Assembly (NCBI GenBank): GCA_025786725.1
Contig: JAHLTZ010000014.1
Span: 62,001 to 126,000 of the forward strand
Reading direction: 5' to 3'
DNA from: Syncephalis fuscata S228
Taxonomy: Eukaryota; Fungi; Zoopagomycota
DNA length: 64,000 bases
Below are positions 24,920-53,617 of the stretch, one piece after another. Position 1 is the stretch's first letter. Each line of letters starts with the position of its first letter. Position numbers and translations under genes: made by a program. Below the pieces are notes generated by a model, which saw only the letters and a list, made by a program, of their open reading frames with translations, did no database searches and was not told the origin of the DNA.

Positions 24920-27900
24920 ATGAAACTCCAGCTACGTGCTAGAAATGGACGGTCACGTCCCACTGATATCAATCCATCCAAGTCGGTAGCGTCACCGCCT
25001 AGTGATACCCGTCCATTAACAGGACAATCATTATTTCGCCGTCAAATATCCGTTATGCTATGGAAGCATTGGACACTTCAGGTAAAATAGATACTATTGG
25101 TGTATGTATAGTACTAACAATGGTGGATGAATAGAAACGACACTGGATTACCACGCTTATTCAGCTATTTATTGCTCCGTTGGTCGTCACACTTATTCTG
25201 TTTATTGTTCAACTAGGTGTTGGTGATGGCCGTGCTGGTCAGGGTAAATACGGCATTCCTACATGGGATGTGCCTGGTCTATCTACGTGTACAGTAAGTA
25301 GAAATAAAGATGGCTGATGCAATATTGATGCGTATCAATCTACGATAGCCATTACGTGGCGTACCTTGTGTTACATTAATGTATGGGCCAGCTAATGAAG
25401 AGACGACAAAGTTTATGACGACATTTGCTCGTAAAAATGCTCGTCGTACTACTTCTGCCCCCAATCTTGAATCAAGTCAACTCTCATTAGGTAGTTAAAT
25501 CGAATCAATTCATCGTAAATGTATTCATTTGTTGTATAGATGCGGCCCCTAGTAAGAATCTAGGTATTGTACCGGTGCCTTCAAAGGACTTTATCTACAA
25601 CTATGCCGCCAAGTATCCAGCCTCATCTAATTTTGGTAGGTTATTACCTAGATCATCCAGTATACGGCACCAATTAATATAATATACATCTATTTAGCGG
25701 TAGCATTTGATAAACAAGAATCGAACGGCAATACTAATTATCAATATCAGATTTGGTATAACTTTACTAATGTAGCCAATTACACGGTATTCGATAATAG
25801 TGCCATGGAAGGCGCACTACGTGATACGAGAATTGATGATCCATTCGGTGTTGATCTATTATCGTTAATGCGCGGTATTGATGAGGCCATTCTGTCGACT
25901 GTGGATCCAAATGCTTCTAATGATATACGGGCTCGTATTAAAGCATTCCCGGACATTGGTCGATCTGTTTATGCTTCGAATAAGGATTCAGTATGGAATT
26001 TGGTGGTCTATTTCTCTTTTTGCCTATTATGTTGCTATTTGTTACGGCATTGGCGTCGGTAGTACGTGAAAAGTCATTAAGATTACGAGAAAGCATGGAA
26101 ATGATGTATGTAGTATGGAGTAGATATACTGGTTGATACTAATAGTTAATGAATAGGGGTATGACTCAGACTGTCTACTGGTTAAGTACTTTTATTGCCT
26201 ATGCTGTTATGGTAGTGATTCAATCACTATTTCTATGTCTATTTGGTATGGCATTTCAATTTAGTTTCTTTTTAAATGCCAATTTTGTGGTAAGTGATTT
26301 ATAATATAATATGAATTGAATCGAATCAATATTAATAGTATGTATTAGGTTGTTTACAGTATATTTGTACTTTATGGATGGGCCATGATTTGTTTTGCTT
26401 TATTCTTGTCCACACTATGTAGCCGGGTTGGTGGAGCAGATATCCTTTTTACATTTTATAGATTACTAGTTTATAGTATTGATTATTATTATTATCCTTA
26501 ATGTTAATTTACTAGGGGCAGGTTTTGGTGTAACCATTATTGCTATTATCTATCAAGTATTGTCACCTAGTTTCTGGTTCACTTGGTATGTTGATCTGGA
26601 ACGATCAAAGCGTGGCAGTCCAGTAGCCGGTCATTCAGCTGGATGGATTATCGGTCTCTTCTTTCCCTTCTTTAACTATAGTCAGCTCTATATTGACGTA
26701 GTAACAAAATCATCTGGATCCACCGATCCATTAACGGGACACTTTGTCAATGGACCTGGTAAGTAAAAATAAACTCTATCGTCATGAATACCAATATTTG
26801 AATAGGATTTGGTTTTATGGATTTGTATCGACATCCTGACATTGGTGGCAGTCAATACGGCAATCTTGTACCGATGCCCAATACCCATTTGATGTTCTTG
26901 TTATTGGATATTGTATTCTGGGCCATTGTTACTTGGTATTTGGACAATGTTGTACCCGATGCCTATGGCTATCGTCGACCCTTCCTATTTCTATTTGATG
27001 GTGGCTACTGGGGTGGTCGGGCCGTATCTCGTGAAGCAGTAACTAAAGTTGCCTATGAGGTAAATAAGCGCTGTTATTATTACAGTATAGAGTATTTGCT
27101 TAATAATTGATATGTCATAGGGCAATGCTGATAAAGATGAAGATTGGATGTGGCCAAGGAACGACAACATACACTTAATCTTACTCAACGCAGTAAGTAG
27201 ATTAATAGCTATATATATATATAGTAACGACTAACCATATGGATACTAGTTGCATTGAGAATTGTTAATTTGACCAAATGCTACAAGAGTGGATTATGGA
27301 CACAAAAAAACAAATTGGCCGTTGATCGACTTTGTTTGTCATTTGCAGAGGGACAATTGTAAGTGGTGTATTGCTATTGATAATGTATTAGCTAATAAGT
27401 AATAAATAGATTGGCTTTACTTGGTCAGAATGGTGCCGGTAAAACAACGACGATGTCAATGTTATACGGTGCATTAAAGTCAACATCAGGGGATGCCTAC
27501 ATTTACGGGCATAGTGTTAATCGTAATATGGATGCTATTCGAGGTATGATGGGTGTATGTCCACAAGTAAGTGTTGAATTGGATTACTTGAGTCTATTAA
27601 TAACATTATATGATAGCATGATATTCTATTTGATGATTTGACGGGAGAAGAGCATATTGCTTTATATGCTGGATTAAAGGGTGTCGTTAAGAGTATTGTG
27701 GGTCCACTTACTCGAGAACGATTATCAGATGTCCGTTTAACAAGTGCAGCACGTACTTGTGCCGGTGCATTCAGTGGTGGTATGAAGCGTCGTTTATCGA
27801 TGATTATTGCCACTATTGGCGATCCTAAGATTATTATTATGGATGAGCCCACCACCGGTATGGTAAGTGATACATATAGTTATATACATATATATATTAA

Positions 27901-28516
27901 TGTTAATTTAATAGGATCCGGTTCATCGGCGTCATGTATGGTCATTTATTGAGAAATTCAAGCGAGGTCGAGTCATTATTCTATCGACTCATTTAATGGA
28001 AGAAGCAGATACATTAGGTGACAAAATAGCCGTTATGGCCAAAGGAAAGCTAGTGTAAGTGGATTGGATACCATATAATATATAATATACAATATACAAT
28101 ATACAATATACTGATTTGTATATGTATAGGGCATTTGGTACTTCAATTCATTTAAAGAACAAGTTTGGTGCTGGCTATCGTGTTTCATTGATGTGTGAAG
28201 ACCAAGAACATGCCACGGCTCATTTGAAGGATATTATACCGCGCATTGTACCGACTGCTCGACTTCATGATGCTACAGCGGGTTCATTGGTCTATCAGAT
28301 CCCTTCACTAACTAATTTGACCAACCTAATTCGCTATGTCGAAGATAATCCCCACGGTAAGTTACACTAGATATTAAATAAAATGACATTGACTCATAGG
28401 TGTTGTTACTATTAATAGGTCTTGTACAAGGTTGGGGCATTACCCAAACGACACTTGAAGAAGTATTTCTACGTATTATTACTCGTGATCGTCGACAAAG
28501 TAAACGCATTCAATAA
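24920..28516 (+). CDS. Half-size ABCA-family transporter (one TMD plus one NBD), about 15 introns including one AT-AC intron
   Basis: [34 protein letters not shown], Walker [26 protein letters not shown], signature [48 protein letters not shown], then a stop. Confidence 0.92.
26440..26512 (+). other. AT-AC U12-type (minor spliceosome) intron in the ABCA gene
   Basis: 5' ATATCCTTT, branch TCCTTAAT at 26495-26502, 3' TTTAC. Splicing gives GCA G|TA GGG GCA, in frame with both flanking exons. Confidence 0.9.
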
Positions 28517-28660
28517 ACTATTGACCATTTTATGATATAATACTATTAATTGGATAGTGTAGATTACTTGTTAACTATAATAGACCATTTAATCAGACGG
28601 CATTTTAATTGACCCAATGAACATTAAGTTCACAGTATTTGTTTGTAATCAATATGATGT

Positions 28661-28896
28661 ACACACACACACACACGTGAACATGTTTGCACAGAATGGA
28701 TTTCGCACGCATCTACCAATAGGCCTTTTGTTAACACACACACACACACCTATTTGTCTATATTAAAGTCGTCAACCAAGCCATATCTTTTCTTTTAAGC
28801 CACCTTTCTTTCTTTCTTGTTCGTTCAACTTGTTTCTATCAACCACATCTTTCGTATATTAACAAACAAACTACAGTTCATTCATTCATTCATTCA
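28661..28896. repeat. Microsatellites upstream of XDH: two (CA)n tracts and a (TTCA)n run abutting the ATG
   Basis: ACACACAC tracts at about 28661-28676 and 28734-28749, and TTCA x5 at 28877-28896. Confidence 0.8.
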
Positions 28897-31800
28897 ATGA
28901 CTATTGCTCCAGGTTCTACTACTTCTACCAGCCATGACGGTGCTCGACAGTCAGTGGCTGGGTTAAAACAGCCATTAACACCAGCGTCGTTGTTATTTTA
29001 CGTCAACGGCACACGGGTTCAACTTGATAACCCTGATCCCGACCTTACTCTATTGCAATACCTACGTCATGCCGGTTTTAAAGGCACTAAACTCGGCTGC
29101 GGAGAAGGTGGCTGTGGTAAGTAGATAATCAGAATTTATAAATAATAAATTCTATAGTACTAATGGCTATGGCGACACTATATAGGTGCTTGTACGGTAA
29201 TGATATCAAGCTACAATGCAACCAATGATTGTATCAAGTAAGTAACCCATAAACTAACGAGTTGATATGAATAACCAATATAATGAATAGTCATATACCG
29301 GTCAATGCTTGTCTTGCCCCACTATGTGCTATGGATGGCAAGCATATTATTACAGTGGAGGGCATTGGCAAGGTAAAGAGCCCACATCCTGTACAGGAAC
29401 GTATTGCTTTATTGCATGGTTCTCAGTGTGGTTTCTGTACACCAGGCATTGTTATGTCATTGTATACACTTTTACGTAACAATCCTGAACCTAGTGAGGC
29501 TGATATTGAAGAAGCATTTGATGGTAATGATTAATAACGTTTGTGCGATTGTTTAATAATACATATTGATTATTGTTGTTGTTGTTAGGCAATTTATGTC
29601 GCTGTACAGGTTACAGACCTATTTTGGATGCAGCCAAAACTGTAAGTCACAAAGATTGAATAAATACATTTCACTATAGCGATTATCTATTAGTTTGTTA
29701 CGAGTAAATGTTGTAAATCAACAGATACTACTGAAAAGAAGGTAATCTAGACTATTTACTAGTAATAACTACTAACATTTATATTGCTCGTTAGCCTGTT
29801 GGCTGTGGTCTAGCTGATTGTTGTCAATTAAATGATTCTGGTAAAAGTACCGATATTGCTGGTATGATCAAGCCAGTATTGAAAGAATATGACAGCACAC
29901 AAGAGATTATATTTCCACCTACATTAGCCAATTACGCCAAAGATAAGTCAGAACAAGGCATTCATCGTAGACTTGAATTTGTCGGTCCGCGTACTACATG
30001 GCATCGACCATCAAGTGTTGATGAACTATTACTATTGAAGGTACTATTCTATTGTATACATTATATAGATACTAACTATAATGAATATTTAGCATGACCA
30101 TCCAAATGCTAAATTGATTGCTGGCAATACGGAGATTGGCGTAGAAATCAAGTTTAAACACTGCCACTATCCAGTACTTGTACATGCTAGTGATTTACCA
30201 GAATTGTCTACAATTCAATATACAGGTGCGTTTGTTACATAGTATTTAATTAATTTAAATATACTAATGTAGCTACATTACATAGAGCATGGTGTACAAT
30301 TAGGTGCCAATATTACGTTAGCTGCCATGCAAGCAGAATTTCATCGCTTAATAAAGACAGAACAGGTAAGCGTTGAATGATGGCAATGTATTAATACGGA
30401 TAGAGTATTCATCATCGTTTGTGTTATTAGAAGGAACGTGTTGAAACATTTGAAGCATTATTAAGTAATTTGGAATGGTTTGCAGGTCGACAGATCCGTA
30501 GTGTTGGTACATTGGCCGGCAATATTGCCACTGCCTCGCCTATTTCCGATGTGAATCCAATTCTTGTAGCTATTCACGCTCGATTAATTGTATCATCGAC
30601 TTCACGTGGTCGACGTGAAATTCCTATGACCGAATTCTTCCTTGGTTATCGTAAAACGGCTCTAGAGGCTGATGAAGCCATTATTGCCGTTATTATTCCA
30701 TTCTCTCAAAAGAATGAATATGTTCGTGCCTATAAACAGGCCCGTCGTAAAGATGATGATATTGCATTGTTAATGCAGCCATGCGTGTTCAGGTCTGTCC
30801 TGAGACACAAGTAATTAAAGATATCACCATTGCTTATGGTGGTATGGGTCCAACAACAGTGATGGCCAAAGCTACCAGTGCAGTACTACAAGGTGGCACA
30901 CTTGGCGACCAATCTCTGCTTGATCGGGCTACAGATACATTACTGCAACAGGTAAGTCATTGATTCAAATCAGTTAATTATAGTGTATTAATCAACCACT
31001 TAATGGTAGGAATTACGACTACAAGCCTCTACTCCTGGTGGCATGCCTGAGTATCGTATGTCATTGGCGGCCAGTTTCCTTTTCCGCTTCTGGTGTGATG
31101 TATCCAATCAATTGGGTGTTCAAATGGCCTCTGAAGATATTAGTGGCATCAATGAGATCAAACGTGGCCTGTCCCGTGGTGTACAAACATATGTTGATGC
31201 TCAGTAAGTAGCGAGTTTAATAATGCTATAGAATATAATAGCTACTAATACACGTGTATATAGAAATCTTCAAAGTATTGGCAAGTCATTGGCACATGTC
31301 AGTGCCATGAAACAAGTGACAGGCGAGGCAATTTACACGGATGACATACCACCAGTACAAGGCGAAGTATACGCAGCATTTGTTCGATCCAGCAAGGCCC
31401 ATGCCAAGATTATCAGTATCGATGCCAGTGAAGCATTGGCACAAGATAATGTTTATGGCTTCTACAGCTCAAAGGATGTACCCGGTACAAAACATTTAAT
31501 GCCCAATATGGCTGATGAGCCAGTATTTGCCATTGATGAAGTTATTTGTGTTGGACAGCCAATTGGTATGATTGCAGCCATAGATCAGGTGACTGCACAA
31601 CGTGCAGCACGTATGGTTAAAGTGGAATATGAAGAATTACCGCATATTATTACCATTGAAGTAAGTAAAAGAGTAAATAAATATAATAGAAACGATACTG
31701 ATATATAATGATTTATAGGAAGCCATTGAGGCCAAATCCTTCTTTAAAGTACAAAAAAGGATTAATAAGGGCGATGTAGATGGTGCTTTGGCTACAGCAG

Positions 31801-34366
31801 ATCATGTTTAGAAGGTAATAGTTCAGCTGTGTATCCTATTGTATATATTAACAACATTGATATTAGGTGAATATCGTATGGGAGGTCAAGAACATTTCTA
31901 CTTGGGTACGTAATTACCTAGTTAATGCTATTAGTATATTTACCTATGTAATTATGATTAGAAACTCATGGATGCATTGCCATTCCCAAGGGTGAAGATG
32001 GTGAAATGGAATTGATTTCCTGTACACAAAATCCATCAGAAACTCAAGAAATTACCGCTAGAGTATTGGGTGTACCCAGTTCACATGTTGTATGCAGAGT
32101 TAAGCGAATGGGCGGTGGATTTGGTGGTAAAGAATCACGTAGTGTTGCATTAGCAGCAGCTTTGGCGGTTGTTGCCCATAATCTTAATAAGCCGGCACGT
32201 TGCATGCTTGACCGTGACGAAGATATGTACATTACTGGTCAGCGTCATCCTTTCCTTGGACAATGGCGTGCCGGTATTAGTAAAGACGGTATAATACAAG
32301 GTGTTGACTTTAAGGTAAGTAGCTTATCGGTAGTAGAATAGTTGCTTATCATTGATATTAGCTTTATTCTAACGGTGGCTGTACCACCGATCTATCAATT
32401 GCTGTACTGGATCGCGCAACTACTCATTTGGACAATGCATACTACATTCCTAATATACGTATATTAGGCACTGCTTGTCGTACAAATACACCAAGTAATA
32501 CAGCGTATGTATTTACTATAAGCTATATATATATATATAGTACTAATAATTGTTTAGTTTCCGTGGATTTGGTGGACCTCAAGGTATGATTGTTGTTGAG
32601 GCACTTATGCATCAAATTGCCGATCATTTGAAAGTACCCGTTATGGAAATTCAAGTAAGTTACAATAGTTTAGTAGTAGTAGTAGTAGTAGTAGTAAAGT
32701 ACTAATACAATTATTAATTAGGAACGCAACTTTTATAAAGAAGGCCAATTGACCTATTACAACCAAGCAGTAATAGGCTGGCATGTACCTCAAATGTGGG
32801 AACAATTAAAAGCATCAAGTGATTATGCAAAACGACGAGAGGAGGTTGACGCCTTTAATCGTTCTTCAAAATGGAAGAAGCGTGGTTTGGCGATGTTACC
32901 AACAAAGTAAGTTGTTAAAATGAATATTGTATATTTAGTAATATACTGTTACTGCCATCACTATAAGATATGGTATTTCCTTTGGTTTCCTGACTCTCAA
33001 TCAGGCCGGTGCACTTGTGCATGTCTACAATGATGGATCAGTATTACTCTCTCATGGTATGTAATAGCCTTTCTATACTTGATATATATAAAAAGACTAA
33101 TATATATATGATATGGTATGATATGATATGAATCGACAATAGGTGGTACGGAAATGGGACAAGGACTACACACAAAGATGATTCAAATATGCGCTGAATA
33201 TCTACGTATTCCTGTATCTTCAGTTCATATAAGTGAAACTGCCACCGATAAAGTGGCCAATACAAGTCCCACTGCAGCTAGTGCCTCGAGTGATATCCTT
33301 GATTATAAACTAACAACAGCAACAATAATAATAATAATTGAAATAGTAGCCTTAACTTTTGATTGATTGGTTGATTGATCGATGAGTGTACATCTGAATG
33401 GTATGGCCATCAAGTTTGCTTGTGAGAAAATATCGGCCCGTTTAGAACCATATCGCCAGAAATATCCTGATGCTACATTTGCTGAAGTAAGTGTAACTAT
33501 AACTTGTACAGTAATGACTAACAGTATAGTAGATTGTTCACAAGGCCTACATGGATCGTGTTAATCTCAGTGCCAATGGTTTCTACAAGGTGCCCGATAT
33601 TGGTCATAACTGGGAGACCAACGAAGGACCACTTTATTTATACTATACGCAAGGCACAGCAGTAAGCGAAGTCGAAGTGGATATTCTTACTGGCGATCAC
33701 ACTGTCATCCGAACGGATTTGATGATGGATATTGGCAAGAGTATAAATTATGTCATTGATGTTGGACAGGTATAGTGCTTATAGATTAGTAATAATGAAT
33801 ATTAAATACAATATACGTCGTTAGATTGAAGGTGCTTTGATGCAAGGCATTGGTAAGTGAAGCTTGTACGAGTAAGTTGAAAAGAATGTAACTAAATAAT
33901 GATCTATTTAGGCTGGTGTACCATTGAACAGTCTTTGACCTTCCCTAATGGACATATGTTCACTCGTGGACCAGGTGCCTATAAACTGCCTGGTTTTAGA
34001 GATATTCCACAGGATATGCGGATTCACATATTTAAGGATGGCAATTATGAACACTTGAAGACAATCAATAGCAGTAAAGGTGTGGGTGAGCCACCTCTTT
34101 TCTTGGGTGCTTCAGTGATATTTGCCATTCGAGATGCTTTGCAATCGGCTCGGTAAGTTGTTTAGTTTGTATTGATCAGCGAATGGATGAATGGCTAATT
34201 GACATGACGGTGCACATTTAGACGAGATGCGGGCTGCGAGGAAAGTTTAATACTACACTCGCCGGCTACTGCTGAACGTATTAGATTGGCGTGTATGGAT
34301 AGTATTATGACGGCAGCTCGACTCGGTGAGGCTGATGTTGGTAAACCATGGGTAGTAGAACCCTAG
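28897..34366 (+). CDS. XDH: Xanthine dehydrogenase/oxidase (Fe-S, FAD, molybdopterin), about 23 introns including one AT-AC intron
   Basis: [124 protein letters not shown]. Confidence 0.97.
33293..33391 (+). other. AT-AC U12-type intron in XDH
   Basis: 5' ATATCCTT, branch-like CCTTAAC at 33350-33356, 3' GTAC. Splicing gives AGT G|AT CTG AAT GGT ATG, the conserved SASSDLNGMA. Confidence 0.92.
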
Positions 34367-34876
34367 CTGGCTTTATTATTTGAATTTGTCAATAAATAAG
34401 TGCATTGTGAAGCAAAGAAGTGCTCTATAGCTTGTGTTTGTTTATGCATATATATATATGCTACTAAAGTTTTATTATAATGTCAGTGTATTTGCTTAGT
34501 AGATATTGTTATAGTAGCACTGCGTTATATAGCAGCTTGATAGTCTTTTACTTGAATGGTCAATCTATTTAAGAGTATTTGATTATTGATGCCATTCATC
34601 ATCTAATTTCATCTTTAATAGATAAACAGTCACGCGTGTGTATATATCGAGTGCATGTTGCTCCTGTAATGTGAATATAAAAATAACGTATACATTTAAA
34701 CTTATAGTCAGTTTCAATGCGTGACAATGTAATAGTTTATGCTATACATGATCAATTTATTGGATGTATAGCAACGGCTAATTTATTGTCATTTCGTAAG
34801 ACGTCATAATTTATTACAAATAAAACATGACACAATGATATGGACCACCAGGGAATACGTGAGAATTTGCTTCGAT

Positions 34877-36275: not shown

Positions 36276-38339
36276 TTATAACATGTATGCTTCGTATACA
36301 CAAGCATCTTTCTCATTAACCCTACCAATAGCAACAGCTGATACTTTATATTCAATAAATTTTGAAAATAAATATTTACTTGGTGGCGGAAACTGTGTTG
36401 TTTCTACAGGATTTAAAGGCATATGTTCTTTGTTCTCTTCACTTGTCTGTCAGTAAGATTGTTGGTGGATTATATATACGACCAGTACGCATGTCTACAA
36501 ACCAATTCTCTTTGTTTTCTGAGCTAAACAATTCACATAATGATCCAAGAAAGGGACAAGTTGAAAGTAGAGTGGACAAGTGATTGAGCGCAATAATCCC
36601 ATTTCGAGCAGCTAACACATCAAGTGCTGGACGATTTTGAACAACAATCAGTTTCTCACTGTATAGCTTTGTAATACGATTATGGCTTATAGATCGACTC
36701 CATAATACATGTCCTTGGTCGGCACTGTCAATTGGCAATACTCGACCGTAATCTCTGGCATCAAATATTGATTGTGCTGAATCATTTGGTGAAAACTTTC
36801 CTAGTACAAATAATGACAATGTGGCACTAAATGTTCTATTTTTAAGACGTTTTGTTTGATTTTTTTGATCATATATAATGATTAAACACATCTTTTCTGT
36901 ATAAGTCAGTGTTTCGATTGTAGCGTTCGGACAATATGGAATGGTGATTTGATCAGATAATATTTTCTGACACTGAGATTGACCTTTTTGAGCATCGAAT
37001 ACCTCCCATTGAATTCGCATTACTTGATTGCCATTGCCATCAATTTGTGGATCTGGAGTAGTAATGAACTTGGAATCAGTGTTGGATTTTACAGAATTGG
37101 ATATTATTTTCCACATGATAAATTGGCATTGACTATAAGAAGCAAACTGAATACAGGAAAGTGAATAACGGTTGTGATGTCGTGGGCCTTCTATCCACTG
37201 ATTTGCATCTAGATTAAATAAATAATATTTATAGCATTTTTCTTTTTCATAGTAAGTGTCTAAAAACATCCAGTCTTCATAAATAGTGGATATTCTACGT
37301 AATTCTGGTTTTTCCGAATTAATATCTTTGGAGTCAAGATAAATGATATTAGGTGGTGAATTGCCAGCAACAGGCCATACTAAAAGGGCACGTCGTGAGA
37401 CAACATATCGTTCATATGAAGCTGTAATGGCTGAAAGGCTAATAGAATACTCATCTAAAGGGTTATAAACCTCATTTTCATTTTCTTTACTATATTGTGC
37501 TTCCATTTCAGCTACATTTGCTATTGTCAATATTGTTAATACATAGCTGATATAATCATTAGCATTGACAATTATTACTTACTGATTGGCCCACCAATAT
37601 CTATTGGCTTGACATCATTATATGTATCTATATCAAATTACCCACAACAAATCGACGTGTTCCATAAAACGCACGGAATAAACCATCATTACAAAATAAA
37701 GACGGCGCTGAAGGCATAGTCAGTTTCTTCCAAGCCAACTTTTCTTTGTTGTGTCCGTTTTTCTTCTTAAATACGTTATCCAAATTAAGCACGTTACTGA
37801 TGCATTTATATCTTCCCTTAGTGCATACCAAGGATTGACGCTTCTCAATGCTGCTTGAGTGTGCTTACTAATCGGCAATTGACACGTCCGTTTTTTGAAT
37901 CGGCCCATTATAAAGTTGCGATTAGCCTGTCGACGTCTTTGATAAGCATAAAACCATTTGGTGGTTTCAAAATTAGGTGCTAATAACAAATGACTATCAG
38001 GTGAGTATATTCATTATCATCATTATCGACAGTTGCAACAGCAGACGATAATAACTGTTCCTGGTCTGTTCTATTTACATTGAGTGTAGATTCATCCGAT
38101 TCTGATGTAGGATTGATATCCAAGTTATACCATGTTAGCCAGTCTTGCTCACGTCGATCACCTAGACAAAACTTTCGTCTATATTGTCGCTCCCAATGAT
38201 TGGGTTGGTCAACTATTATTTTATAAATATGTCGACAGCAGTAGCAAAAAGCACAGTTCTTTCTCTTCCATAAAACGACACAAATACAGCAAAATATCAT
38301 GGCTTTGCCAAAATGTTTACTGCGTGTATTTAATGACAT
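36276..38339 (-). CDS. F-box-like family protein, copy B (1 intron, several frameshifts)
   Basis: ORFs 37980-38426, 37720-37989, 37628-37831 and 36439-37530 are homologous to copies A, C and D. It ends ..YEAYML*. Confidence 0.78.
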
Positions 38340-39925
38340 GGCGAATAGTAATAACAGTTTAAAGTTTGCTACGTAGTAGATAGGAAGAACAGTGTTGGAT
38401 ACAAGTAGAAGAAAAAGCATGCACAATGTGGCTGCTTTGTCTATTTATAGTATTCAATGGTTACACATTTGAATGACTATTAATGATGATATTGCTACTA
38501 TTTGATCAATAAGTAAATGCATAATGAATGCATAAAGTCATATTGAGTCGTCTGTAAAACTAGGCAGGTTTTAATTATTCAATAGGTGACTAATTGCTAA
38601 GAAAACAGCTATATAATTGGTTGGTACTGTAATTGAACGAAGAGCTTATGTTAAAATTGCATACTTGCAAGTACAACGTATCCTTATTATTCAGCTTATT
38701 CACCAATAACTATCAATACTACACTACCAAATTTCCCATAATTTATTAGCTGAATTACTATTTATGTTGATATAATTTTATTGTAATAGATTATATTGGT
38801 GCAATGAAAATAATTAACAATTATAAACATATATAAATGCGTAAAAATACGAGTTAAATAGACTTGGCTATTATTTATTGTTAGCAAACGCTAATTTTTA
38901 TAGATATATTCCAAATAAATAAACATGGCGTTTAAAATATCATGAAAAGTGTGCGGTTACAATTATTTAGATTGGAAAAATCAGGCAATTTTTAATTATC
39001 AAATATGGTAATAGTATATTAAATCATTTATAATTTTGACTAAATTTTACTTTAGCTTTTACATTTTGAGTCCCCAAAGCACAATTGTTCCAATCAGTCA
39101 TATTATTGCTATATGCAACATAGCTATATTACTTTCTATTAAATATTGTTAATAAATTGATTTAAATAAATAATGTAACATACCATTTACTTTCTTTAGA
39201 AGATTTGAGGCCGATTATTTGGTTGTTGGCCATGTGTAGAAAGATTGATCGAATATTAATAAAAGTCATATGATTGCAATTCCATGTCATTCCGCGTTTG
39301 TTGTTGTTGCATCTATGTACAGTATGGATTATTGCATCTAATGGTCACTTCTATTTTCTAATATTATACTATTGCATTTTGGGCATATTTATGCTGTAAG
39401 ATCAATATTAATATAACTATTATAAAAGTCGTTTATTAAACAGTCATTTCCCTATAGCCAACCTGACTAAATAAATGACATTTGAACAATTAATAGCATA
39501 ACGACAACATATATTATTAAGCTATTTTATTAAACATGTTAAATGTGTGATTTCCGTATTAGGAAATAGTTAAGGAATTGTCAAGGATTATATTGATGTT
39601 ATTTATAAAAGTACAATAAAGAAAATGTAACTAATGTTGCTCTAATCCTAACATAATATCTAGAATATTGCTTATGATCGAGCAATACAATCGAAGGTTG
39701 TATCGCTAACTAAAAGGCTGTTGGCTAAATGAGTGACTAGCTTTTCTGGTTTTGGCAATCAACAACAGGTTTATTTCCATCGCAACTGTTTCATTCTGAC
39801 TCATGCATTTGTTGACGACGTTTTTCAGACGAATTTGTAATAAATAGTCAATGTAGATAACGAGGACATCGTGGTATCCCATTTTTAAACTATACTATTA
39901 TTGCATAAAGAACAACAGCGGCAGA

Positions 39926-41482: not shown

Positions 41483-41533
41483 TCGAATTAGCAGCATAAT
41501 CCATATAGCTACAGACAATATCTTTACTAGATT

Positions 41534-41571
<38 letters not shown>

Positions 41572-43538: not shown

Positions 43539-45092
43539 ATGACATCTAGTGTAATGAAACCTATCGTTGAAGATACTTATAGTCTTGGCGATAACAACTA
43601 TAATAGCACTAGCACCAACAGAAAGCATCGTTCATTTTCCCTGAGTTTATCAGCATTATCTCGTTCTCGATCTAAAGATGATATTGTTAAAAAGCCAGGG
43701 GATTCAATTGATAGTGTTGATTTGATAACATCATCAAAGCTATTTTCGCAATCACAACCATCACTACCCATTAATAACAACAAAAATGCTAAAAAAAGCA
43801 AAGTTATAAAAAAGCGCATTAGTAATAGTGCATTATCTACTTCGTCGGCGTCTTCATCATCGTCGTCGTCGTCGTCTTCTTCGATATTTCATCGTTGGTC
43901 ATCTTTTGGTCGAAAGTCAAAACAATCAAAAGAATCTGAACAATGGTGGCAAGAGTTTGAGCGTGAAGTAGATCCATCTCTACTTAAAACTGCCGACTCG
44001 TCATTGGCGGTATCATCAAAATCTAAGGATGGTTGCGTAAGTAGACTGTAATTTAATCACCGCCTTCATTAATTAACATTTGATTTGATTATTAATATTT
44101 ATTAGAAACCATTGGCAAAATCGAATTATTCTAGCCCATCAGTTCGTCCTAGCGTCTTATCAGATAGCCCTCAGCATATCTTTAGACGGCAGCATGACAA
44201 AATCATTCAGTCGAAAACAATGCATCTGTCAAATCAAACACAAAATTATTGCTACAGCACCTATTACTGTAGCAAGAAAACCAATGGCCTTGGCTACAGG
44301 TCAAAAAGTCGTATCTAAACTACACAATCCAGGTCATGGTGATTTATTTCCAGAATATAATCGTCAACGCAATAGCAATTTAGTTGGTTTGACATTGATC
44401 CAGAGACTCAGCGTCTTGCCGACTTGTCACCAGACACACGTGATTACGTACTCTACCAAAGAATGCAGCAACCAGACATGAGCGCATGTATTTCAAAACT
44501 GCCAAGTCGGCCCACGCGCATACAACACCGTCGCCCCACACTAAACCAATCTACCAATTATCACCCAATAGAATTCTTTAACTCATCCACATCGTTTGCA
44601 ATGTGGCCAGATAAAGAATCGGCAACAACAGTTAGTGCGATGAACGGGGGACGATTACGACGACGACGCAAAGGTCTTGGTATTTATCCTTATGGCGTAC
44701 ATATATTAACGGCATTAGAAGAAGTAACCGAGCCAGAATCGTCCGACACGGAGGCGGACAGCTTTATTTCAGATGCACAGTCTGTAATAACGATGAATAC
44801 TACAGCAACCATTTCAACAACACAAATAGAAAATAGCGCATTACTTGCCATGGACTGGCGCGTTGTCGTGCAAGGATCGCGTGACTCTGGTTTTGGCGAA
44901 ACGCTAGAATTATCAGATAGTAAAACTGACGCTTGCTTGCCTAATAGCGATAGTAATGATAGCTACAATACTAAACAATCACCAATTGCTACAATCACAC
45001 CAACCATTAATGCAACTTTTATTAATACTAATATTATAACCACCCAGCAATATTATAATCAGCAGCTTTATTGCAACTTATTTTTAGACTAA
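43539..45092 (+). CDS. Hypothetical Ser-rich, largely disordered protein (1 intron at about 44036-44105, frameshifts)
   Basis: Consecutive plus-strand ORFs with coding-like composition. I recognise no domain. Confidence 0.55.
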
Positions 45093-45404
45093 GCACATTT
45101 GTGCATGTATAATGATTGACAACTATTCTGTTTGCGCATTCAGTTTTAAATATAAAATTATTTACCATTTAACAAGCTTAATTTTTTATTTAAATCATTT
45201 ATTCAATTTATATGTAAAACATAATTTATACCTTTGGCGGCCATTCCATTGCAATTCCATATCATCACATGTCTTGAATTTGAGTACAGTATGTATATTA
45301 CGCTTCGAGTCAGCAGTTGTAATATTGTGCAATAAACATACGATAATATTTAACTCGTATTATTGAATGTTTACAATCAGCGTAGTTATTTTAACTAAAT
45401 TTAT

Positions 45405-46045
45405 TAAAATATTTTATATTGTTTATGTAAATGCTATCATGATGATTATAAATTACCTAATATTTCCACGCTAAGAATTGCAACTGCACACTTTCTATGA
45501 TATTTTAAGCAATATTGTCTACTTGTGCAATAAGCTTATATGTAGATAAGTAGTTGTATAACAATACAATAGCCAATTCTATTTAGCATATATTTTACAC
45601 ATTTTACATGTTGATAACTAATAGTTTGTTTTATTGTATCGTTGCAATTCATTACAATATGAATGTAAAAGCATACAAAACAAAGAAATTGAAAACGTGA
45701 CATTTTTGTTACTGTTACGGTATCTTCATAAACGTTGCGTTTAATTACAGTACCAACCAATTATATAGCTGTTTTCTTAGCAATTAGTCACCTATTGAAT
45801 AATTTAAAACCTGCCTAGTTTTACAGACAACTCAATATGAATCCATGTGATTCATTATGCATTTACTTATTGACCAAATAATAGCAATAGTCACTCATTA
45901 ATAGTCATTCAAATGTGTAATCATTGAATAATATAAATAGAATAAAACAGTTTACATTGTGCATGCTTTTTCCTTCTACTTGTATCCAACACTGTTCTTC
46001 CTATCTACTACGTAGCAAACTTTAAGCTGTTATTACTATTCAGCC
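45405..46045 (+). repeat. About 640-bp upstream block duplicated at 55221-55864
   Basis: Near-identical sequence, including twin spurious ORFs at 45536-45760 and 55355-55579 that differ at one residue. It is partly shared with 38340-38980 in inverted orientation. Confidence 0.92.
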
Positions 46046-48114
46046 ATGTCCTTAAATACACGCAGTAAACATTTTTTGCAAAGCCATGATATTTTGCTGT
46101 ATTTGTGTCGTTTTATGGAAGAGAAAGAACTGGTGCTTTTTGCTACCTGCTGTCGACATATTTATAAAATAATAGTTGACCAACCCAATCATTGGGAGCG
46201 ACAATATAGACGAAAGTTTTGTCTAGGTGATCGACGTGAGCAAGACTGGCTAACATGGTATAACTTGGATATCAATCCTACATCAGAATCGGATGAATCT
46301 ACACTCAATGTAAATAGAACAGACCAGGAACAGTTATTATCGTCTGCTGTTGCAACTGTCGATAATGATGATAATGAATATACATCACCTGATAGTCATT
46401 TGTTATTAGCACCTAATTTTGAAACCACCAAATGGTTTTATGCTTATCAAAGACGTCGACAGGCTAATCGCAACTTTATAATGGGCCGATTCAAAAAGCA
46501 TATGTGTCAATTGCCAATTAATGAAAGCGCTCAAACCTTCTTGATAAGCATCAATCCTTGGTATGCATTAAAGAGAACTACAGGTGTATCGAACTTGTGG
46601 TTAATTCGGCATAATGTATTTAACAAGAGCAATGGACATAACAAAAAAGAGCTGGCTTGGAAGAAACTGACTATTCCTTCAGCATCGTCTTTATTTTGTA
46701 ATGAAAATCTATTTCATGATTTTTATGGAACACGTCGATTTGTTGTGGGTAATGTTTCTATAGATACATATAATGATGTCAAGCCAATACATATTGGTGA
46801 TCCAATAAGTAAGTAATAATTATTAATGCTAATGATTATATCAGCTATGTATTAACAATATTGACAATAGCAAATGTGGCGGAGATGGAAGCACAGTATA
46901 TTAGAAAAAATGAATCTGAAGTTTCTAATGCTTTAGACGAGCATTCTACTGGTCCATCTACCACTACGTCTTCAACTGAACGAGGATTTGACAAACGGCA
47001 GGCTCTTTTAGTGTGGCCTGTTGCTGGCAATTCACCACCTAATATCATTTATCTTGACTCCAAAGATATGGATTGGGAAGAACCATACATACGTAGCATA
47101 TCCACTATTTATGAAGACTGGATGGTTTTAGAAACTAACTATAAGAAAGAAAACTGCTATAAATATTATTTATTTAATCTAGACGCAAATCAGTGGATAG
47201 CAGGCCCACAATATGACTACGATTGTTCACCTTTCTGTATTCAGTTTACTTCTTATAATCAATGTCAATTTATTATGTGGACAATATCCGATTCTGTAGA
47301 ATCCAACACTGATTACAGGTTCATTACTACTCCAGATCCACAAATTGATGGCAATGGCAATCAAGTAGTGCGAATTAAATGGGAAATATTCGATGCTCAA
47401 AAAGGTCAATCTCAGTGCCAGAAAATATTATCTGATCAAATCACCATTCCATATTGTCCGAACGCTGCAATCGAAACACTGACTTATACAGAAAAGATGT
47501 GCTTAATCATTGTATATGATCAAAAAATCAAACAAAACGTCTTAATAATGGAACATTTAGTGCCACATTGTCATTATTTGTACTAGGAAAGTTTTTACCA
47601 AATGATTCAGCACAATCAATATTTGATGCCAGAGATTACGGTCAAGTATTGCCAATCGATAGTACCGACCAAGGACATGTATTATGGAGTCGATCTATAA
47701 GTGATAAAAGTGTTACAGGTCTATACAGTGAGAAGCTGATCGTCGTTGAAAAGAATGCAGCATTTGATGTGTTAGATGCTCGAAATGGGGACTTATTGCG
47801 CTCAATTGATTGTCCATGTTACTCAAGACTTGTTCCCTTTCTTGGACCATTATGTGAATTGATTAGCTTAAAACACAAAGAGAATTGGTTGTAGATATGC
47901 GTACTGGCCGTATATACGACCCACCAACAAGTCTTACTAACAGACAAGTTGAGGATGATAAAGAACATATGCCTTTAGGTCCCGTAGAAATAACGGAGTT
48001 TCCGCCAATAAATAAACCTCCATCTTGGGAGTCTATTGAATATAAAGTATCAAGCGTTGTTGTATTAAATTCAACAAGAATGATGCTAGTGTATGCGAAG
48101 CATACATGTTATAA
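46046..48114 (+). CDS. F-box-like family protein, copy C (best preserved; intron 46809-46870)
   Basis: SHDILLYLCRFMEEKELVLFATCCRHIYKII F-box-like N-terminus. A phase-1 GTAAGT..CAATAG intron joins the 256-aa and 241-aa ORFs. Confidence 0.82.
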
Positions 48115-48430
48115 ACAATAAACTTTATTTACAAACATTCAATACAAATAATTTTTATGTTACATATATTAAATATTGAATCTTTACTAAATCCACATTC
48201 ACTGATTAATATGGTGTGGTAAATCATTACACCTAAGCAATACTAATTAGTTAACATGTGTGAATTAAACAAACATCGGTAGTTAACCACCCCGTTGGTA
48301 ATACTGCTGTTTCTTTTCTCTTACTACGTACACTTGTCGCTCTTGTATGTTTACTGCTGGTTGTGCACGCGTATTTGTGTCTATTTCTTTTTATTATCTA
48401 CTATCTATCTGCAAACAGCACTGTTGAGTC

Positions 48431-49684
48431 ATGTCAAATCCGGCCGAATCTAGTGATAAACAAAAAACGGTAGACGGTGTCACCGTGGAAGATGTCGACG
48501 ATCTTGACGATCTTTTAGATGGTAATTAACGAACAATAATATAGTGCTTTAGAGTATCTATGTCTTTTATTTATCTGCTGCTACAATAGATGTACTGGAC
48601 AAGTTTCAAACACCTAACAGTGCTCCCTCGGCCACTGCAGCTGGAAAGCAACAGGTAAAGGACACCGGTAAAACAGCCGCACCGTTTAGCAGTGACAATG
48701 TCAGCCATGAAGACGAAACAGACGGACTAATGGATGACGATCTATTTGCCAAAGAACTTGCCGAAGGCATGGAAGAGCTTATGCGACAGATGGATAATGG
48801 TGGCGACTTTCAAAAGGATATTGAACAATTGCTTCAAACTATGAAGTTAGATCCTACTGCTGAAGGACTAAATAGCACAACATCATCCAAGTCTCAACAA
48901 GGAACGGCAAAAGAAGATAGCAAAGCTACAACAACAACAGGCGGAAATGATGGTAAACCACAGAATTTCCAAGATACAATTACCGAAACGATGAATCGAC
49001 TTAAAAATAGCTCAAATCAGGCTAAGGTATACGCATTATACATTTAGATAGCAATATACACTTACATTATGTTTATTATAGACTGAATCAAAGACAGCCG
49101 CAGAAGATGAGACACCTGACGCATTAATGGCTGAAATGATGCGCCAAATGGAGCAGCTTACCGATTCAAGCGACTTTGACGGTATTATCGACGGTATGAT
49201 GAACCAGCTAATGACACGCGATGTTCTTTACGAACCAATGAAGGAACTGGCCGAAAAGGTAAATAAACAAGCAAGCCAATAATTAGTTTGATCAATATAC
49301 TTATTACGCAAATATACAATAGTATCCTGCCTACTTGGCTGAAAACAAAGATAAATTACCAGATGAGACGTTTAAGCAGTATGAACAACAGCATCTGTAT
49401 GTAAAGCAAATTGTAGCAAGATTTGAGGTAGTAGGACCGTCTAAAGCGTCTAATGGCGATGAAATGGCACCAATTGATACGGAAATATCAAAACTAATGC
49501 AAAAGGTAATGATACAAACCATGATCGTTTATGTTATAAATATTAACTAGTTACTACTATTTATTAGATGCAAGAATGTGGACAACCACCAAAGGAATTA
49601 CTTGAACAAATGGCACCTGGAATGGGATTTGATGAAGAAGGTGTGCCCAATCCACCAGATATGGAACAATGCACCATCATGTAA
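48431..49684 (+). CDS. PEX19: Peroxisomal import chaperone Pex19, 4 introns
   Basis: DDLDDLLDDVLDKF, FQDTITETMNRLK, MMNQLMTRDVLYEPMKELAEKYPAYL, MQKMQECGQPPKEL, and C-terminal CaaX CTIM*. Confidence 0.95.
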
Positions 49685-49951
49685 CTATTTAAATAGTGGC
49701 TGATGATGGATAAGTAGCAATTAACTAGAGGAAGATAATAGTAATAAATAAATTGATTTAATTAATAATGATGACACATTTCACAATGATTCATTGATTC
49801 TTTTTTACTCTTATTCACACTACGCACACCTTGTAAACTACTCTACTCTACTCATTCTACTATAGCATACACCACTATAGTAACAGCAATAGCCGTAGTC
49901 ATAGCCCTATCAGTTCTATAAACATATATACACATATATCTACTGGTCAGT

Positions 49952-51606
49952 ATGGAGTGTGCTACCTGTGAATCCGTTCATCGACAAAACTACTGCCGTG
50001 ACTGTATTCAAGATTTGTAAGTTATATGCAGCTATTGAGCAATCAGTTACTCAATACTGTTTATTTATAACTATTTAGAGTACAGGAACATCGAGAACGT
50101 ATGTGCAAAGCAAAGATAGAACGGGATCGTCAGTATCGGAATGTACAACTTGTACTGGAGAATAGTGCCTGGACAGCTCGACAAAAAGTAGCCGAACAAG
50201 AGGCTGTTAGAACACGTATTGCTCAGTCAAAGGAGGGCTGACCAGATTACGTACCGAATACGAACAGTGTAAGTAGAATTGGCTGTATAGGCTGCCATTG
50301 GTATTCGTACTACAGGCTGAGTAACACAGGTTGATTTGTAGTACAGCGCAAGACAACATTATTACGAGAAACAAATAACGATACAAGAAATCGGCTAGAT
50401 GATGCATGGCGTTCAGTAACTACTCGATGGCAACAAACAATACAAAGCCGTCCAGAATACATTGAACAACAACAGAAACGTAAAGCGGAACTTGATAAAA
50501 AGCTATTACTTTCGCGTAAACTATTGTTACGCGAGTTACTTCACGTCTTTAACGTGAGACGTGTCTCATCTAGATCGTCACATCGCCGCAGCCAACAAAC
50601 GAAAGCAACCGCAGTATCAGAACAAGATAGTCCAGTATATACGATAAGAATATCCGGTCTACAATTACCAGAACAGGCTGATTGGTATTCACCTTGTAAG
50701 TTTACGTGTTAAATGTTAATATAGGCATCTATTGATCTATTTAATCTATCTATAATAGTATATTCGCGCAATGCCACTAATACAGCTTGTCAAATGGTCA
50801 TTAATATGTTAAACTTGATGGCTTATTATTTAAATGAAAAGCTACCGTTTACTATGATTGATCAAGGCACTTCCTCGTTTGCCTACCGCTCAACAGCTGG
50901 CGGTGATACTCGGTATGTAATCGTGTTTTATTCTAATATATATATATTATATGTTATATTATATATACAGCTTACTAATAAATGATTCATTTATAGATCA
51001 TCTCCGCTTTATTTAACTGATAATAATTCAGATCAATTTACTCGAGGATTTGCTATGATATGCTACAATGCAGCCTATCTTTGTCATGTACGTGGATTTA
51101 AAACAGCTATAGAGCAATCCACCTATATATTATGGCAATTATGGAGGTGCTGTCGTGGATCTTCAATAGCATCATCATCTCAGCGATCTACCAATGTTAC
51201 TGCTAACAACATCAGCACTATTGCTGTTAATAATAGCAATAGCAATATTAACAATGAAGACGATAATAATAATAGTAGTAGCAATAGTAGTATTGTTTTA
51301 AGGTAGCGACAGTATTAAATCTACATTTATACAGTTTATCTAACATTTCTATTATTGTATAGCTGTACATCAACATTCTCGTTAAGTTTCGACAAATTAG
51401 TAAAACATCTTTACTCGTTACAACGGGCCACAGTCATGCGGGAAAGTGTCTGTTTGGTAGAACGAGATGAAACAGGCACCATGCTATTGCCTACAATGGA
51501 AACATGGGACCTTGTAGAAATGCCTTTACCACCGACACCAGCACAGGTGGCCGAGTTAGAGATGTGGCGAGATAGTCAACGTCAACGAGATATAGGACAA
51601 ACTTAG
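49952..51606 (+). CDS. ATG14/UVRAG(Vps38)-like PI3K complex subunit, about 5 introns
   Basis: N-terminal MECATC..YCRDC zinc motif, a coiled coil, then YTIRISGLQLP, MLNLMAYYLNEKLPF and PLYL..FTRGFAMICYNAAYLC. Confidence 0.7.
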
Positions 51607-51831
51607 TTGTAAAGCAGTTGTAGCAATATAATTGATCGCTCATTTGTATGTATAAATAAATATGATATAATATATAGTAGATAAGGATAAACAGCATTTC
51701 ATTAGTTTTGTTATAACGATGACAATAATGGTTAATTCGTTGGATGTTGGTTGTTGAGAGTTGAAGGATGGCCATGCTGGCTGGAATATGTGTGGTGTGT
51801 GTGTGTGTATAGACAGTAGACAAATAGACCG

Positions 51832-51858
51832 CTAATCATAAGGATTACCTGGATAAAG

Positions 51859-51891
<33 letters not shown>

Positions 51892-52720
51892 GAGATGGCA
51901 ATAGTTATATACATATACATGTACATATATTTAACAATCATATTATACTGAGCAATATAGTAGAGTGAGCTAGAATAGATGACAAACTAACCTGTATAAT
52001 AATTGGCCATAGTATGTGATCCTGGTCCGCCACCGCTATTACCAGACCCGCCACCTAGATTGTTACCGTTGGTACCTGTAACACCACCACCATAACTACC
52101 ACTCGAATGATGCTGAGCTGCAATCATCGAGGAGTGTTGTTGGAATATAAGTGCCAGTTCCTGCTGTTGTTCCGTACGTGGCCCACCTTCCTTGGGCGGA
52201 CCCGTGGTCCGTTCCATCTTGGTAGCCTATCAAAATAGATAGATTAATATTAATATTGCACTTTATAATAAACCCACCTCACGATACTTGGCCAAATAGA
52301 TTTTCAATGCTTCAGCATAGTTATCAAATCCTAATGCTTGCATAGCCCATAATACATCCTCGCCGTTAATTGTCTTGCGCTTTTCTTGCTGGCATCGGTC
52401 ACTTGCTGTAAACACCCGTCCCACGAGCCCATAATCTAATAGTTAAGAATGTTATGGTGCATGCTAGGTGGTTATATATATACTATATATATATATATAA
52501 TAAACAATAAAGGATATTCGCTTGTAATAAATGAAATGAATTCTGACACGCATTCCTGGATAGTCTCTTTGGCTTCTTTGGCAATCTTGGCGTTGTCAGG
52601 TAGACCACGCTTCATGATGCGGGCTACATTGGCAATAGGTAAGAAGCGATCCTGCTCTTTTACTTCGTCACCGGGTGAGCCGGGATCGTCGAATGAATTA
52701 CGCGAGTTGTCGGCCGACAT
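51832..52720 (-). CDS. HAP3: CCAAT-binding factor subunit HAP3/NF-YB, 3 introns, the first of them AT-AC
   Basis: [42 protein letters not shown]|[41 protein letters not shown]. Confidence 0.96.
52408..52517 (-). other. AT-AC U12-type intron in HAP3/NF-YB
   Basis: On the minus strand: 5' ATATCCTTT, branch TTCTTAAC (plus strand 52442-52449), 3' TTTAC. Splicing gives AGC GA|A GCA AGT GAC, the conserved ITSEASD. Confidence 0.92.
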
Positions 52721-53498: not shown

Positions 53499-53617
53499 AG
53501 CACAGTTTTGGTGATAATGTAGCAATTTAAGAATAAATATTGCCAATAGTTAATTTAGTTTAAAAGTATTTATTCAATAATTAAATAATATCATTCAGTG
53601 ACGTGTAAATGTTGTCG

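What the first reader, a model, noticed from the sequence alone, without database searches (positions are those of the whole stretch)
26440..52517. Three AT-AC minor-spliceosome introns in 26 kb: possibly a fungus unusually rich in U12 introns
Seen: three unrelated genes (ABCA, XDH, HAP3) each need an intron that starts ATATCCTT, carries a (T/C)CTTAA(C/T) branch site and ends in AC to restore a conserved reading frame. By hand I count about 110 introns in the window, so roughly 3% are U12-type. All three are the AT-AC subtype, and I found no GTATCCTT-type donor. Established: U12 introns are well under 1% of introns in most genomes that keep them, GT-AG is usually the commoner U12 subtype, and the minor spliceosome is lost in yeasts and essentially all Dikarya. 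Inference: this lineage may have an expanded, AT-AC-biased minor-intron set that GT-AG-only gene callers would miss. With n=3 this could be local chance.
Basis: partly seen in the sequence, partly recalled or inferred. Interest (0 to 1): 0.85.

Follow-up and report, generated by a model that had tools for sequence, protein, structure and literature searches.

The report
Three real, inherited U12 introns
The three AT-AC introns are genuine minor-spliceosome introns in a genome that keeps that machinery, but genome-wide such introns number only about 100-200, roughly 0.2-0.4% of introns, so the 3% seen here is a local cluster and not an expansion.

Summary
Observation confirmed. ABCA (26440-26512, +), XDH (33293-33391, +) and HAP3 (52408-52517, -) each carry an ATATCCTT...AC intron with a CTTAAY branch site.

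- **Junctions:** the Pfam profile coordinates of the flanking exons abut, leaving exactly one position for the split codon in HAP3 and XDH. An intron-less relative aligns without gaps across the ABCA junction.
- **RNA:** a transcript contig skips exactly 110 nt at the HAP3 intron.
- **Machinery:** the genome (29.4 Mb) has U11, U6atac, a full-length U12, a PDCD7/59K hit and a base-pairing candidate for U4atac.

Interpretation only partly supported.
- **Abundance:** strict donor-plus-branch-site patterns give about 35-60 AT-AC and 26-47 GT-AG introns genome-wide. I extrapolate about 100-200 in all, roughly 0.2-0.4% of introns. That matches Rhizophagus, Neocallimastix and Basidiobolus (0.2-0.55%), not 3%.
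- **Subtype:** GT-AG U12 introns exist. The AT-AC share is about 60%.
- **Origin:** the XDH and HAP3 introns sit at positions that carry AT-AC introns in metagenomic relatives, so they are retained, not gained.

Unexplained: the branch-site-to-3' splice-site distance is 36-37 nt in two of the three introns (published optimum 11-13 nt). Five strict AT-AC hits lie within 107 kb of this contig.

The scan's first readers had already noted U12 introns on other pieces of this genome (62 notes, unchecked).

The parts
26440..26512 (+). U12-type AT-AC intron in the ABCA-like transporter gene (73 nt, phase 1). Donor ATATCCTT at 26440-26447, branch site TCCTTAAT at 26495-26502, terminal AC at 26511-26512.
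   Evidence: Gapless alignment of both flanking exons to relative P0001, with one residue left for the split codon. The relative's exon is uninterrupted here.
26349..26439 (+). ABCA exon upstream of the intron. It ends with 1 nt of the split codon.
   Evidence: Weak ABC2_membrane_3 match at profile positions 246-268. Local alignment to P0001 residues 1-18.
26513..26760 (+). ABCA exon downstream of the intron.
   Evidence: 65% identity to P0001 residues 20-101.
33293..33391 (+). U12-type AT-AC intron in the xanthine dehydrogenase gene (99 nt, phase 1). Donor at 33293-33300, branch site GCCTTAAC at 33349-33356, then a 35-nt spacer rich in TTGA repeats, terminal AC at 33390-33391.
   Evidence: MoCoBD_2 profile positions 65-114 and 116-139 on the two sides. 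The only in-frame GT/GC-AG alternatives delete 8-12 conserved residues. Three relatives have an AT-AC intron at the same position.
33142..33292 (+). XDH exon upstream of the intron.
   Evidence: MoCoBD_2, E = 2.8e-17.
33392..33486 (+). XDH exon downstream of the intron.
   Evidence: MoCoBD_2 profile positions 116-139.
52408..52517 (-). U12-type AT-AC intron in the HAP3/NF-YB gene (110 nt, phase 2). Donor at 52517-52510, branch site TTCTTAAC at 52449-52442, terminal AC at 52409-52408.
   Evidence: CBFD_NFYB_HMF profile positions 2-42 and 44-65 on the two sides. The RNA contig skips exactly 110 nt. The position is shared with introns in many eukaryotes and with an AT-AC intron in relative L038.
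52518..52720 (-). HAP3 exon 1, from the start codon to the donor.
   Evidence: RNA contig piece 52517-52715.
52278..52407 (-). HAP3 exon 2.
   Evidence: RNA joints at 52225/52277.

Best explanation
These are three ordinary, inherited U12-type AT-AC introns, removed by a working minor spliceosome in an intron-dense, AT-rich 29-Mb eukaryote. It is most likely an early-diverging fungus, but I did not establish that.

Inferred mechanism, from the established model and from complementarity found here: U11 and then U6atac pair with the rigid donor ATATCCTT. U12 (GUAAGGA) pairs with the CTTAAY branch site. The 3' cut falls at the first pyrimidine-A-C downstream of the branch site.

Genome-wide the set is of ordinary size for a lineage that keeps minor introns: about 100-200 introns, roughly 0.2-0.4%, of which about 60% are AT-AC. 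Three in 26 kb is a local cluster, not a sign of expansion. At least two of the three are retained ancient introns.
For: Shown:
- The junctions restore conserved domains with exactly one profile position for the split codon, or align without gaps to an intron-less relative.
- RNA contigs remove exactly 110 nt at HAP3. The depth of bin 52401-52600 is 0.45 of the contig's depth, and the contig piece starts at 52517.
- U11 scores 47.5 bits and U6atac 37.8 bits, both above their gathering scores. A full-length U12 scores 34.6 bits and keeps UAAGGA and an Sm site.
- PDCD7/59K hit at 29.2 bits, above the cut-off.
- Genome-wide counts: AT-type 54 against 17 control, GT-type 30 against 4. The wider patterns give 119 against 86 and 114 against 32.
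- The unbiased 200-kb sample holds one clear U12 intron.
- Relatives carry AT-AC introns at the same XDH position in three contigs and at the same HAP3 position in L038. Fifteen other eukaryote contigs have a U2-type intron at the HAP3 position.
- Of the five U12 introns checked in this genome (the three here plus one each in L004 and L001), none is in phase 0 (phases 1, 1, 2, 2, 1). This fits the known phase bias (PMC10639083).

Inferred: the snRNA pairings and dependence on the minor spliceosome.
Against: - U4atac was not found by the Rfam model. There is only a complementarity-based candidate.
- zf-U11-48K gave no hit.
- The branch-site-to-3' splice-site distance of 36-37 nt in XDH and HAP3 is far from the published 11-13 nt optimum (PMC3584512).
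- Splicing of the XDH and ABCA introns was not seen in RNA.
- Five strict AT-AC hits within 107 kb of contig C46 are more than chance easily gives: about 0.2 expected from 54 hits over the genome.
- The genome total is extrapolated from strict motifs, and the intron denominator is rough.
Confidence: 0.82

Rival explanations
1. One reading: the lineage has an expanded, AT-AC-biased minor-intron set at about 3% of all introns.
For: Three in about 110 introns in this window. Another first-stage note reports four candidates in 15 kb elsewhere (unchecked). The AT-AC share of about 60% is above the human 26% (PMC10639083).
Against: Three per cent of roughly 50,000 introns would be about 1,500. Strict patterns find only about 60-105 above control in the whole genome, although all four AT-AC introns verified locally match the strict pattern. 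The 200-kb sample holds one. The XDH and HAP3 introns are conserved in relatives, so they are not new.
Confidence: 0.03
2. There is a real regional enrichment. This part of contig C46 retains U12 introns more than the rest of the genome, for example through less reverse-transcriptase-mediated intron loss or a block of ancient genes.
For: Five of the 54 strict AT-AC hits lie at C46:7268-114442, with a sixth under the wider pattern. About 0.2 are expected there. Pairs of U12 hits 1-3 kb apart recur elsewhere.
Against: Over the whole genome, pairs within 50 kb number about 7 against about 5 expected, so there is no general clustering (my count). About 460 windows were available to pick from.
Confidence: 0.13
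3. These are not U12 introns. Nearby GT/GC-AG sites, or the major spliceosome acting on AT-AC ends, remove them.
For: In-frame GT/GC-AG alternatives exist near all three introns. For ABCA, GTGGAG...TAG (85 nt) costs only 3 residues. U2-type donors in this genome are degenerate.
Against: Every alternative deletes or changes conserved residues, and none gives abutting profile coordinates. The HAP3 RNA contig fits only the 110-nt AT-AC cut. A perfect ATATCCTT plus a CTTAAY branch site is the U12 signature, and the matching snRNAs are present.
Confidence: 0.02

Closest known systems
Minor-intron sets of early-diverging fungi: Rhizophagus irregularis (205; 0.27%), Basidiobolus meristosporus (237-249; 0.5-0.55%), Neocallimastix californiae (129; 0.2%) (PMC10639083, PMC11347168)
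   Same: A rigid RTATCCTT donor, a TCCTTAAC-like branch site, a bias against phase 0, and the order of 100-200 introns. U11, U12 and U6atac are detectable while U4atac escapes the covariance model, exactly as reported for mucoromycote and zoopagomycote genomes.
   Different: The genome is much smaller (29 Mb). AT-AC appears to be the majority subtype (about 60%). Several introns have a long distance from branch site to 3' splice site (22-37 nt).
Canonical animal and plant U12-type AT-AC introns (reviewed in PMC3584512)
   Same: Donor, branch site and terminal dinucleotides, no polypyrimidine tract, and conservation of position over long evolutionary distances. The HAP3 position is shared with introns in many eukaryotes.
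   Different: The published optimum from branch site to 3' splice site is 11-13 nt. Here it is 12, 36 and 37 nt. Relatives with the same introns have 14-18 nt.
Blastocystis and Physarum minor-intron expansions (PMC10639083)
   Same: Blastocystis is rich in AT-AC (77%) with very short minor introns. Both show that U12 sets can depart from the human pattern.
   Different: No expansion here. Counts are two orders of magnitude below Physarum, and the phase bias looks classical.

Membership tests
U12-type (minor-spliceosome) intron, AT-AC subtype | 5' splice site ATATCCTT, a highly conserved donor that pairs with U11 and U6atac | tested here: met
   Exact ATATCCTT in all three introns. This genome's U11 starts AAAAAGGGG and its U6atac has AAAGGAGAGA.
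U12-type (minor-spliceosome) intron, AT-AC subtype | TCCTTAAC-like branch site near the 3' end, complementary to U12 GUAAGGA | tested here: met
   TCCTTAAT, GCCTTAAC and TTCTTAAC. U12 carries GAGUAAGGAUA.
U12-type (minor-spliceosome) intron, AT-AC subtype | Short distance from branch site to 3' splice site (optimum 11-13 nt). This is a characteristic feature, not strictly a defining one. | tested here: not met
   Met for ABCA (12 nt) but not for XDH (37 nt) or HAP3 (36 nt). No closer branch-site-like motif is present. RNA confirms the HAP3 3' site. Relatives show 14-18 nt.
U12-type (minor-spliceosome) intron, AT-AC subtype | AT-AC termini that restore the reading frame | tested here: met
   Profile coordinates abut. 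Gapless alignment to a homologue. Alternatives are worse.
U12-type (minor-spliceosome) intron, AT-AC subtype | The intron is removed from RNA at these exact boundaries | tested here: inconclusive
   Met for HAP3, where a transcript contig skips 110 nt. ABCA and XDH lay outside the single 6-kb read-laying run that was allowed.
U12-type (minor-spliceosome) intron, AT-AC subtype | The genome encodes U11, U12, U4atac and U6atac | tested here: inconclusive
   U11 and U6atac are above their gathering scores. U12 is full length but at 34.6 bits, below the cut-off of 53. U4atac has no significant hit. A candidate at C301:50930-50992 rests on pairing to U6atac only.
U12-type (minor-spliceosome) intron, AT-AC subtype | Minor-spliceosome-specific proteins are present | tested here: inconclusive
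   PDCD7/59K hit at 29.2 bits against a cut-off of 27. zf-U11-48K gave no hit. 65K, 35K, 25K, 31K and ZRSR2 were not searched.
U12-type (minor-spliceosome) intron, AT-AC subtype | Splicing depends on the minor snRNAs | not testable with these tools
   This needs snRNA knock-down or blocking oligonucleotides.
Minor-intron-expanded genome (Physarum-like, well over 1% U12) | A genome-wide U12 fraction far above about 0.5% | tested here: not met
   About 60-105 strict hits above control in 29.4 Mb, against an intron density of about 2-3 per kb of genic DNA.

The most novel reading that the evidence does not exclude
In this organism the minor spliceosome has lost the tight spacing rule between branch site and 3' splice site. 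It picks the first pyrimidine-A-C (or AG for GT-type introns) after the branch site, even 36-37 nt away, and AT-AC is the majority subtype. The five verified introns in this genome show 12, 22, 24, 36 and 37 nt. The same introns in relatives show 14-18 nt.
Probability: 0.35. Interest if true: 0.5.

Novelty: new member of a known kind. Interest (0 to 1): 0.35.

Why it matters
Gene callers limited to GT-AG will break or mis-frame ABCA, XDH, HAP3 and roughly 100-200 other genes in this genome. The result adds a small, compact genome to the short list of fungi with a human-like minor-intron density. Such a genome would be a convenient system for studying minor splicing.

The long spacing between branch site and 3' splice site, supported by RNA for HAP3, would relax a rule taken from mammalian work if it proves general. 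It does not overturn the view that U12 introns stay at or below about 0.5% outside a few expanded lineages.

Tried and rejected
- **Sampling the genome.** The fetch from genomes stopped after 200 kb, and loci from pattern hits could not be cut out. So 3' splice sites of the genome-wide hits, the three upstream C46 hits and the U4atac candidate could not be read.
- **Counting U2-type introns by motif or ORF-chaining.** Two attempts had no specificity against reversed-sequence controls and poor recall on RNA-supported introns. I abandoned them, so the intron denominator stays rough.
- **PDB searches with the two ABCA exons.** Nothing found. BLASTP of the 30-residue upstream exon against P0001 also found nothing. 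A local Smith-Waterman alignment was used instead.
- **Searches for machinery.** zf-U11-48K gave no hit. U4atac by Infernal gave only E = 2.8, a level at which bacterial control genomes also ring.
- **Hairpins in the long spacers.** These could shorten the effective distance. The XDH spacer folds at -8.6 kcal/mol but with z = -1.4. HAP3 gives z = 0.25. Neither is significant.
- **RNA runs.** Only one run was available, held as contigs, so there are no junction read counts and no view of ABCA or XDH.
- **Organism identity.** Not established.
Full report
**Observation**

ATATCCTT occurs 9 times in the window against 3.6 expected, and none of 100 shuffles reached 9. Three of these sites have a CTTAAY branch-site motif 47-62 nt further on and a terminal AC that restores a reading frame.

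| Gene | Coordinates (strand) | Length | Phase | Branch site | Branch A to 3' splice site |
|---|---|---|---|---|---|
| ABCA | 26440-26512 (+) | 73 nt | 1 | TCCTTAAT | 12 nt |
| XDH | 33293-33391 (+) | 99 nt | 1 | GCCTTAAC | 37 nt |
| HAP3 | 52517 to 52408 (-) | 110 nt | 2 | TTCTTAAC | 36 nt |

The other six ATATCCTT sites and all four GTATCCTT sites have no branch site or compatible frame.

**Junction proof**

Exons were searched one by one by reference. Short junction peptides were only computed locally.

- **HAP3.** The two exons cover CBFD_NFYB_HMF profile positions 2-42 and 44-65. Exactly one position is left for the split codon.
- **XDH.** The two exons cover MoCoBD_2 positions 65-114 and 116-139, again leaving one position.
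- **ABCA.** Pfam and PDB were uninformative. A search of 1.8 billion representative proteins gave P0001, 65% identical.
  - The downstream exon aligns to P0001 residues 20-101 and the upstream exon to residues 1-18, both without gaps.
  - P0001's metagenomic contig has one uninterrupted exon at this point.
- **Alternatives.** In-frame GT/GC-AG alternatives exist near all three introns, but each deletes or alters conserved residues.

**RNA**

The only public run that holds this DNA is a set of transcript contigs. Laid on 49001-55000, it shows 13 GT-AG joints. One further joint row was dropped because it touches the TA repeat at 52470-52511.

- One contig piece begins at 52517.
- The depth of bin 52401-52600 is 580.5, which is 0.45 of the contig's 1290.1. 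So 90 of the 200 positions are covered, and 110 nt are skipped.
- Only the AT-AC cut fits this. The in-frame variants of 100, 112 and 116 nt do not.

**Machinery**

- U11 scores 47.5 bits and U6atac 37.8 bits, both above their gathering scores.
- U12 is matched over its full length at 34.6 bits, below the cut-off of 53.
- All three keep their functional boxes: AAAAAGGGG in U11, AAAGGAGAGA in U6atac, and GAGUAAGGAUA plus Sm sites in U12.
- U4atac was not found. Olthof et al. report the same pattern for mucoromycote and zoopagomycote genomes (PMC11347168).
- A pattern built from complementarity to this U6atac finds C301:50930-50992. It has CGUCCUUG, an 8-bp hairpin and CGCCAAC at the human-like spacing. 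This is a candidate only.
- PDCD7/U11-59K is hit at 29.2 bits, above its cut-off. zf-U11-48K is not hit.

**Genome-wide abundance**

| Pattern | Hits | Reversed control |
|---|---|---|
| ATATCCTT N{28,68} YCTTAAY | 54 | 17 |
| GTATCCTT N{28,68} YCTTAAY | 30 | 4 |
| ATATCCTT N{20,140} CTTAAY | 119 | 86 |
| GTATCCTT N{20,140} CTTAAY | 114 | 32 |

- The wider GT-type count includes roughly 35 copies of one repeat family.
- A few hits are duplicate contigs, for example C334:7254 = C46:7268.
- This gives about 35-60 AT-AC and 26-47 GT-AG introns with strict motifs.
- One of the five introns verified in this genome has a branch site outside CTTAAY. It is the GT-AG intron in an AP-mu gene beside the U12 gene in L001. 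I therefore extrapolate to about 100-200 in total.
- The unbiased 200-kb sample holds one clear case.
- With 2-3 introns per kb of genic DNA, the genome should hold roughly 45,000-55,000 introns. That is a rough figure, and it puts U12 introns at about 0.2-0.4%.
- Published values are Rhizophagus 0.27%, Neocallimastix 0.2%, Basidiobolus 0.5-0.55% and human 0.28% (PMC10639083, PMC11347168).
- A 64-kb window should hold about 0.1 strict AT-AC introns, so three is a local excess and not the genome's rate.
- The AT-AC share is about 60%. That is above the human 26% and below the 77% of Blastocystis (PMC10639083).

**Age of the introns**

- **HAP3.** I read 80 metagenomic NF-YB loci.
  - Fifteen have a U2-type GT intron at exactly the HAP3 position and phase, and three have a GTATCC donor there.
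  - One close relative (L038) has an ATATCCTT...TTCCTTGAC...AC intron at that position.
- **XDH.** Three ORF fragments from relatives read through the donor as D-I-L. Their contigs (L107 at 93% identity, L108 and L109) all carry AT-AC introns at the same codon.
- **ABCA.** The 65%-identical relative lacks the intron.

At least two of the three are therefore retained ancient introns, which argues against recent gain.

**Unexplained**

- The distance from branch A to the 3' splice site in this genome is 12, 22, 24, 36 and 37 nt. These are ABCA, L001, L004, HAP3 and XDH. The published optimum is 11-13 nt (PMC3584512).
- The same XDH and HAP3 introns in relatives have 14-18 nt.
- The XDH spacer looks like an expansion of a TTGA repeat.
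- In all five introns the site used is the first YAC (or AG for the GT-type intron) after the branch site. HAP3 skips a GAC.
- Spacer hairpins are not significant.
- Contig C46 holds 5 of the 54 strict AT-AC hits within 107 kb, where about 0.2 are expected. Genome-wide there is little clustering beyond pairs 1-3 kb apart.

**Verdict**

These are real, ordinary U12 introns in a genome with a working minor spliceosome. There is no expansion. The subtype balance is moderately shifted towards AT-AC, and the 3' spacing may be relaxed.

First-stage readers flagged U12 introns on other pieces of this genome: 62 notes over about half of it. These notes are unchecked, but they are in line with the estimated total.

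Noticed in passing
L001:943-1012 (-), i.e. G000:C157 beside the U12 snRNA gene: A GT-AG U12-type intron (GTATCCTTT...ACTTTAAC...TTAG, 70 nt, phase 1) in a clathrin-adaptor mu-like gene. It lies about 500 bp from the U12 snRNA gene. Its branch site is outside CTTAAY, so strict patterns undercount.
   Followed up: yes
G000:C301:50930-50992 (+): A candidate divergent U4atac. It has CGUCCUUG and CGCCAAC, complementary to this genome's U6atac stems, with a perfect 8-bp hairpin between them. The locus could not be fetched.
   Followed up: partly
G000:C46:327491-327616 (-): An exon matching the C-terminal part of PDCD7 (U11/U12-59K) at 29.2 bits.
   Followed up: no
G000:C46:7268, 8221, 21885 (-), upstream of the window: Three more ATATCCTT...CTTAAY hits on the same contig. 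That makes 5-6 within 115 kb. Two of them are 1 kb apart and may lie in one gene.
   Followed up: partly
G000 contigs C24, C34, C102, C201, C311, C320, C325: A repeat family of at least 30 copies begins GTATCCTTGCTATTTTG and is rich in GTTAAC and AGTTAAGTAATTA motifs. It mimics a GT-type U12 donor plus branch site and inflates naive counts.
   Followed up: no
G000: C334:7254 = C46:7268; C339:70251 = C14:21068; C359:7260 = C24:207716; C62:17477 = C310:125619: Identical intron sequences on different contigs. The assembly seems to hold haplotigs or recent duplications.
   Followed up: no
window 721-987 (-), 46813-47583 (+), 56618-57094 (+); also 1016-1534 (-), 37983-38444 (-), 55765-56221 (+): Several copies of the same ORF-bearing repeat, probably a transposable element, lie in the gene-poor parts of the window.
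   Followed up: no
window 10956-12101 and 13464-14598 (+): A tandem duplicate of a protein-kinase-like gene. The antisense ORFs at 11231-11473 and 13727-13969 are identical.
   Followed up: no
window 52118-52186 (-): The RNA contig also removes a 69-nt GT-AG intron (GTGGGC...TGCAG) from the low-complexity C-terminal coding part of HAP3.
   Followed up: no
window 50207, 50507, 50656, 50664, 50862, 53194; insertion behind 50235: The transcript contigs differ from the genome at six bases and by one inserted C. This suggests another allele or strain, or an assembly error at 50235.
   Followed up: no
L071, L079, L080 (metagenomic NF-YB loci, plant- or moss-like): At the HAP3 intron position these loci have a GTATCCAC donor and a TTCCTAAAT motif about 11 nt before the AG. 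The position may be an ancestral U12 intron shared by fungi and plants.
   Followed up: partly
P0012-P0042 (XDH fragments from other organisms): Many XDH homologues read on through ...SDLNGMAV and then break about 6 codons downstream of this intron position. This suggests a different, nearby U2-type intron in those lineages.
   Followed up: no
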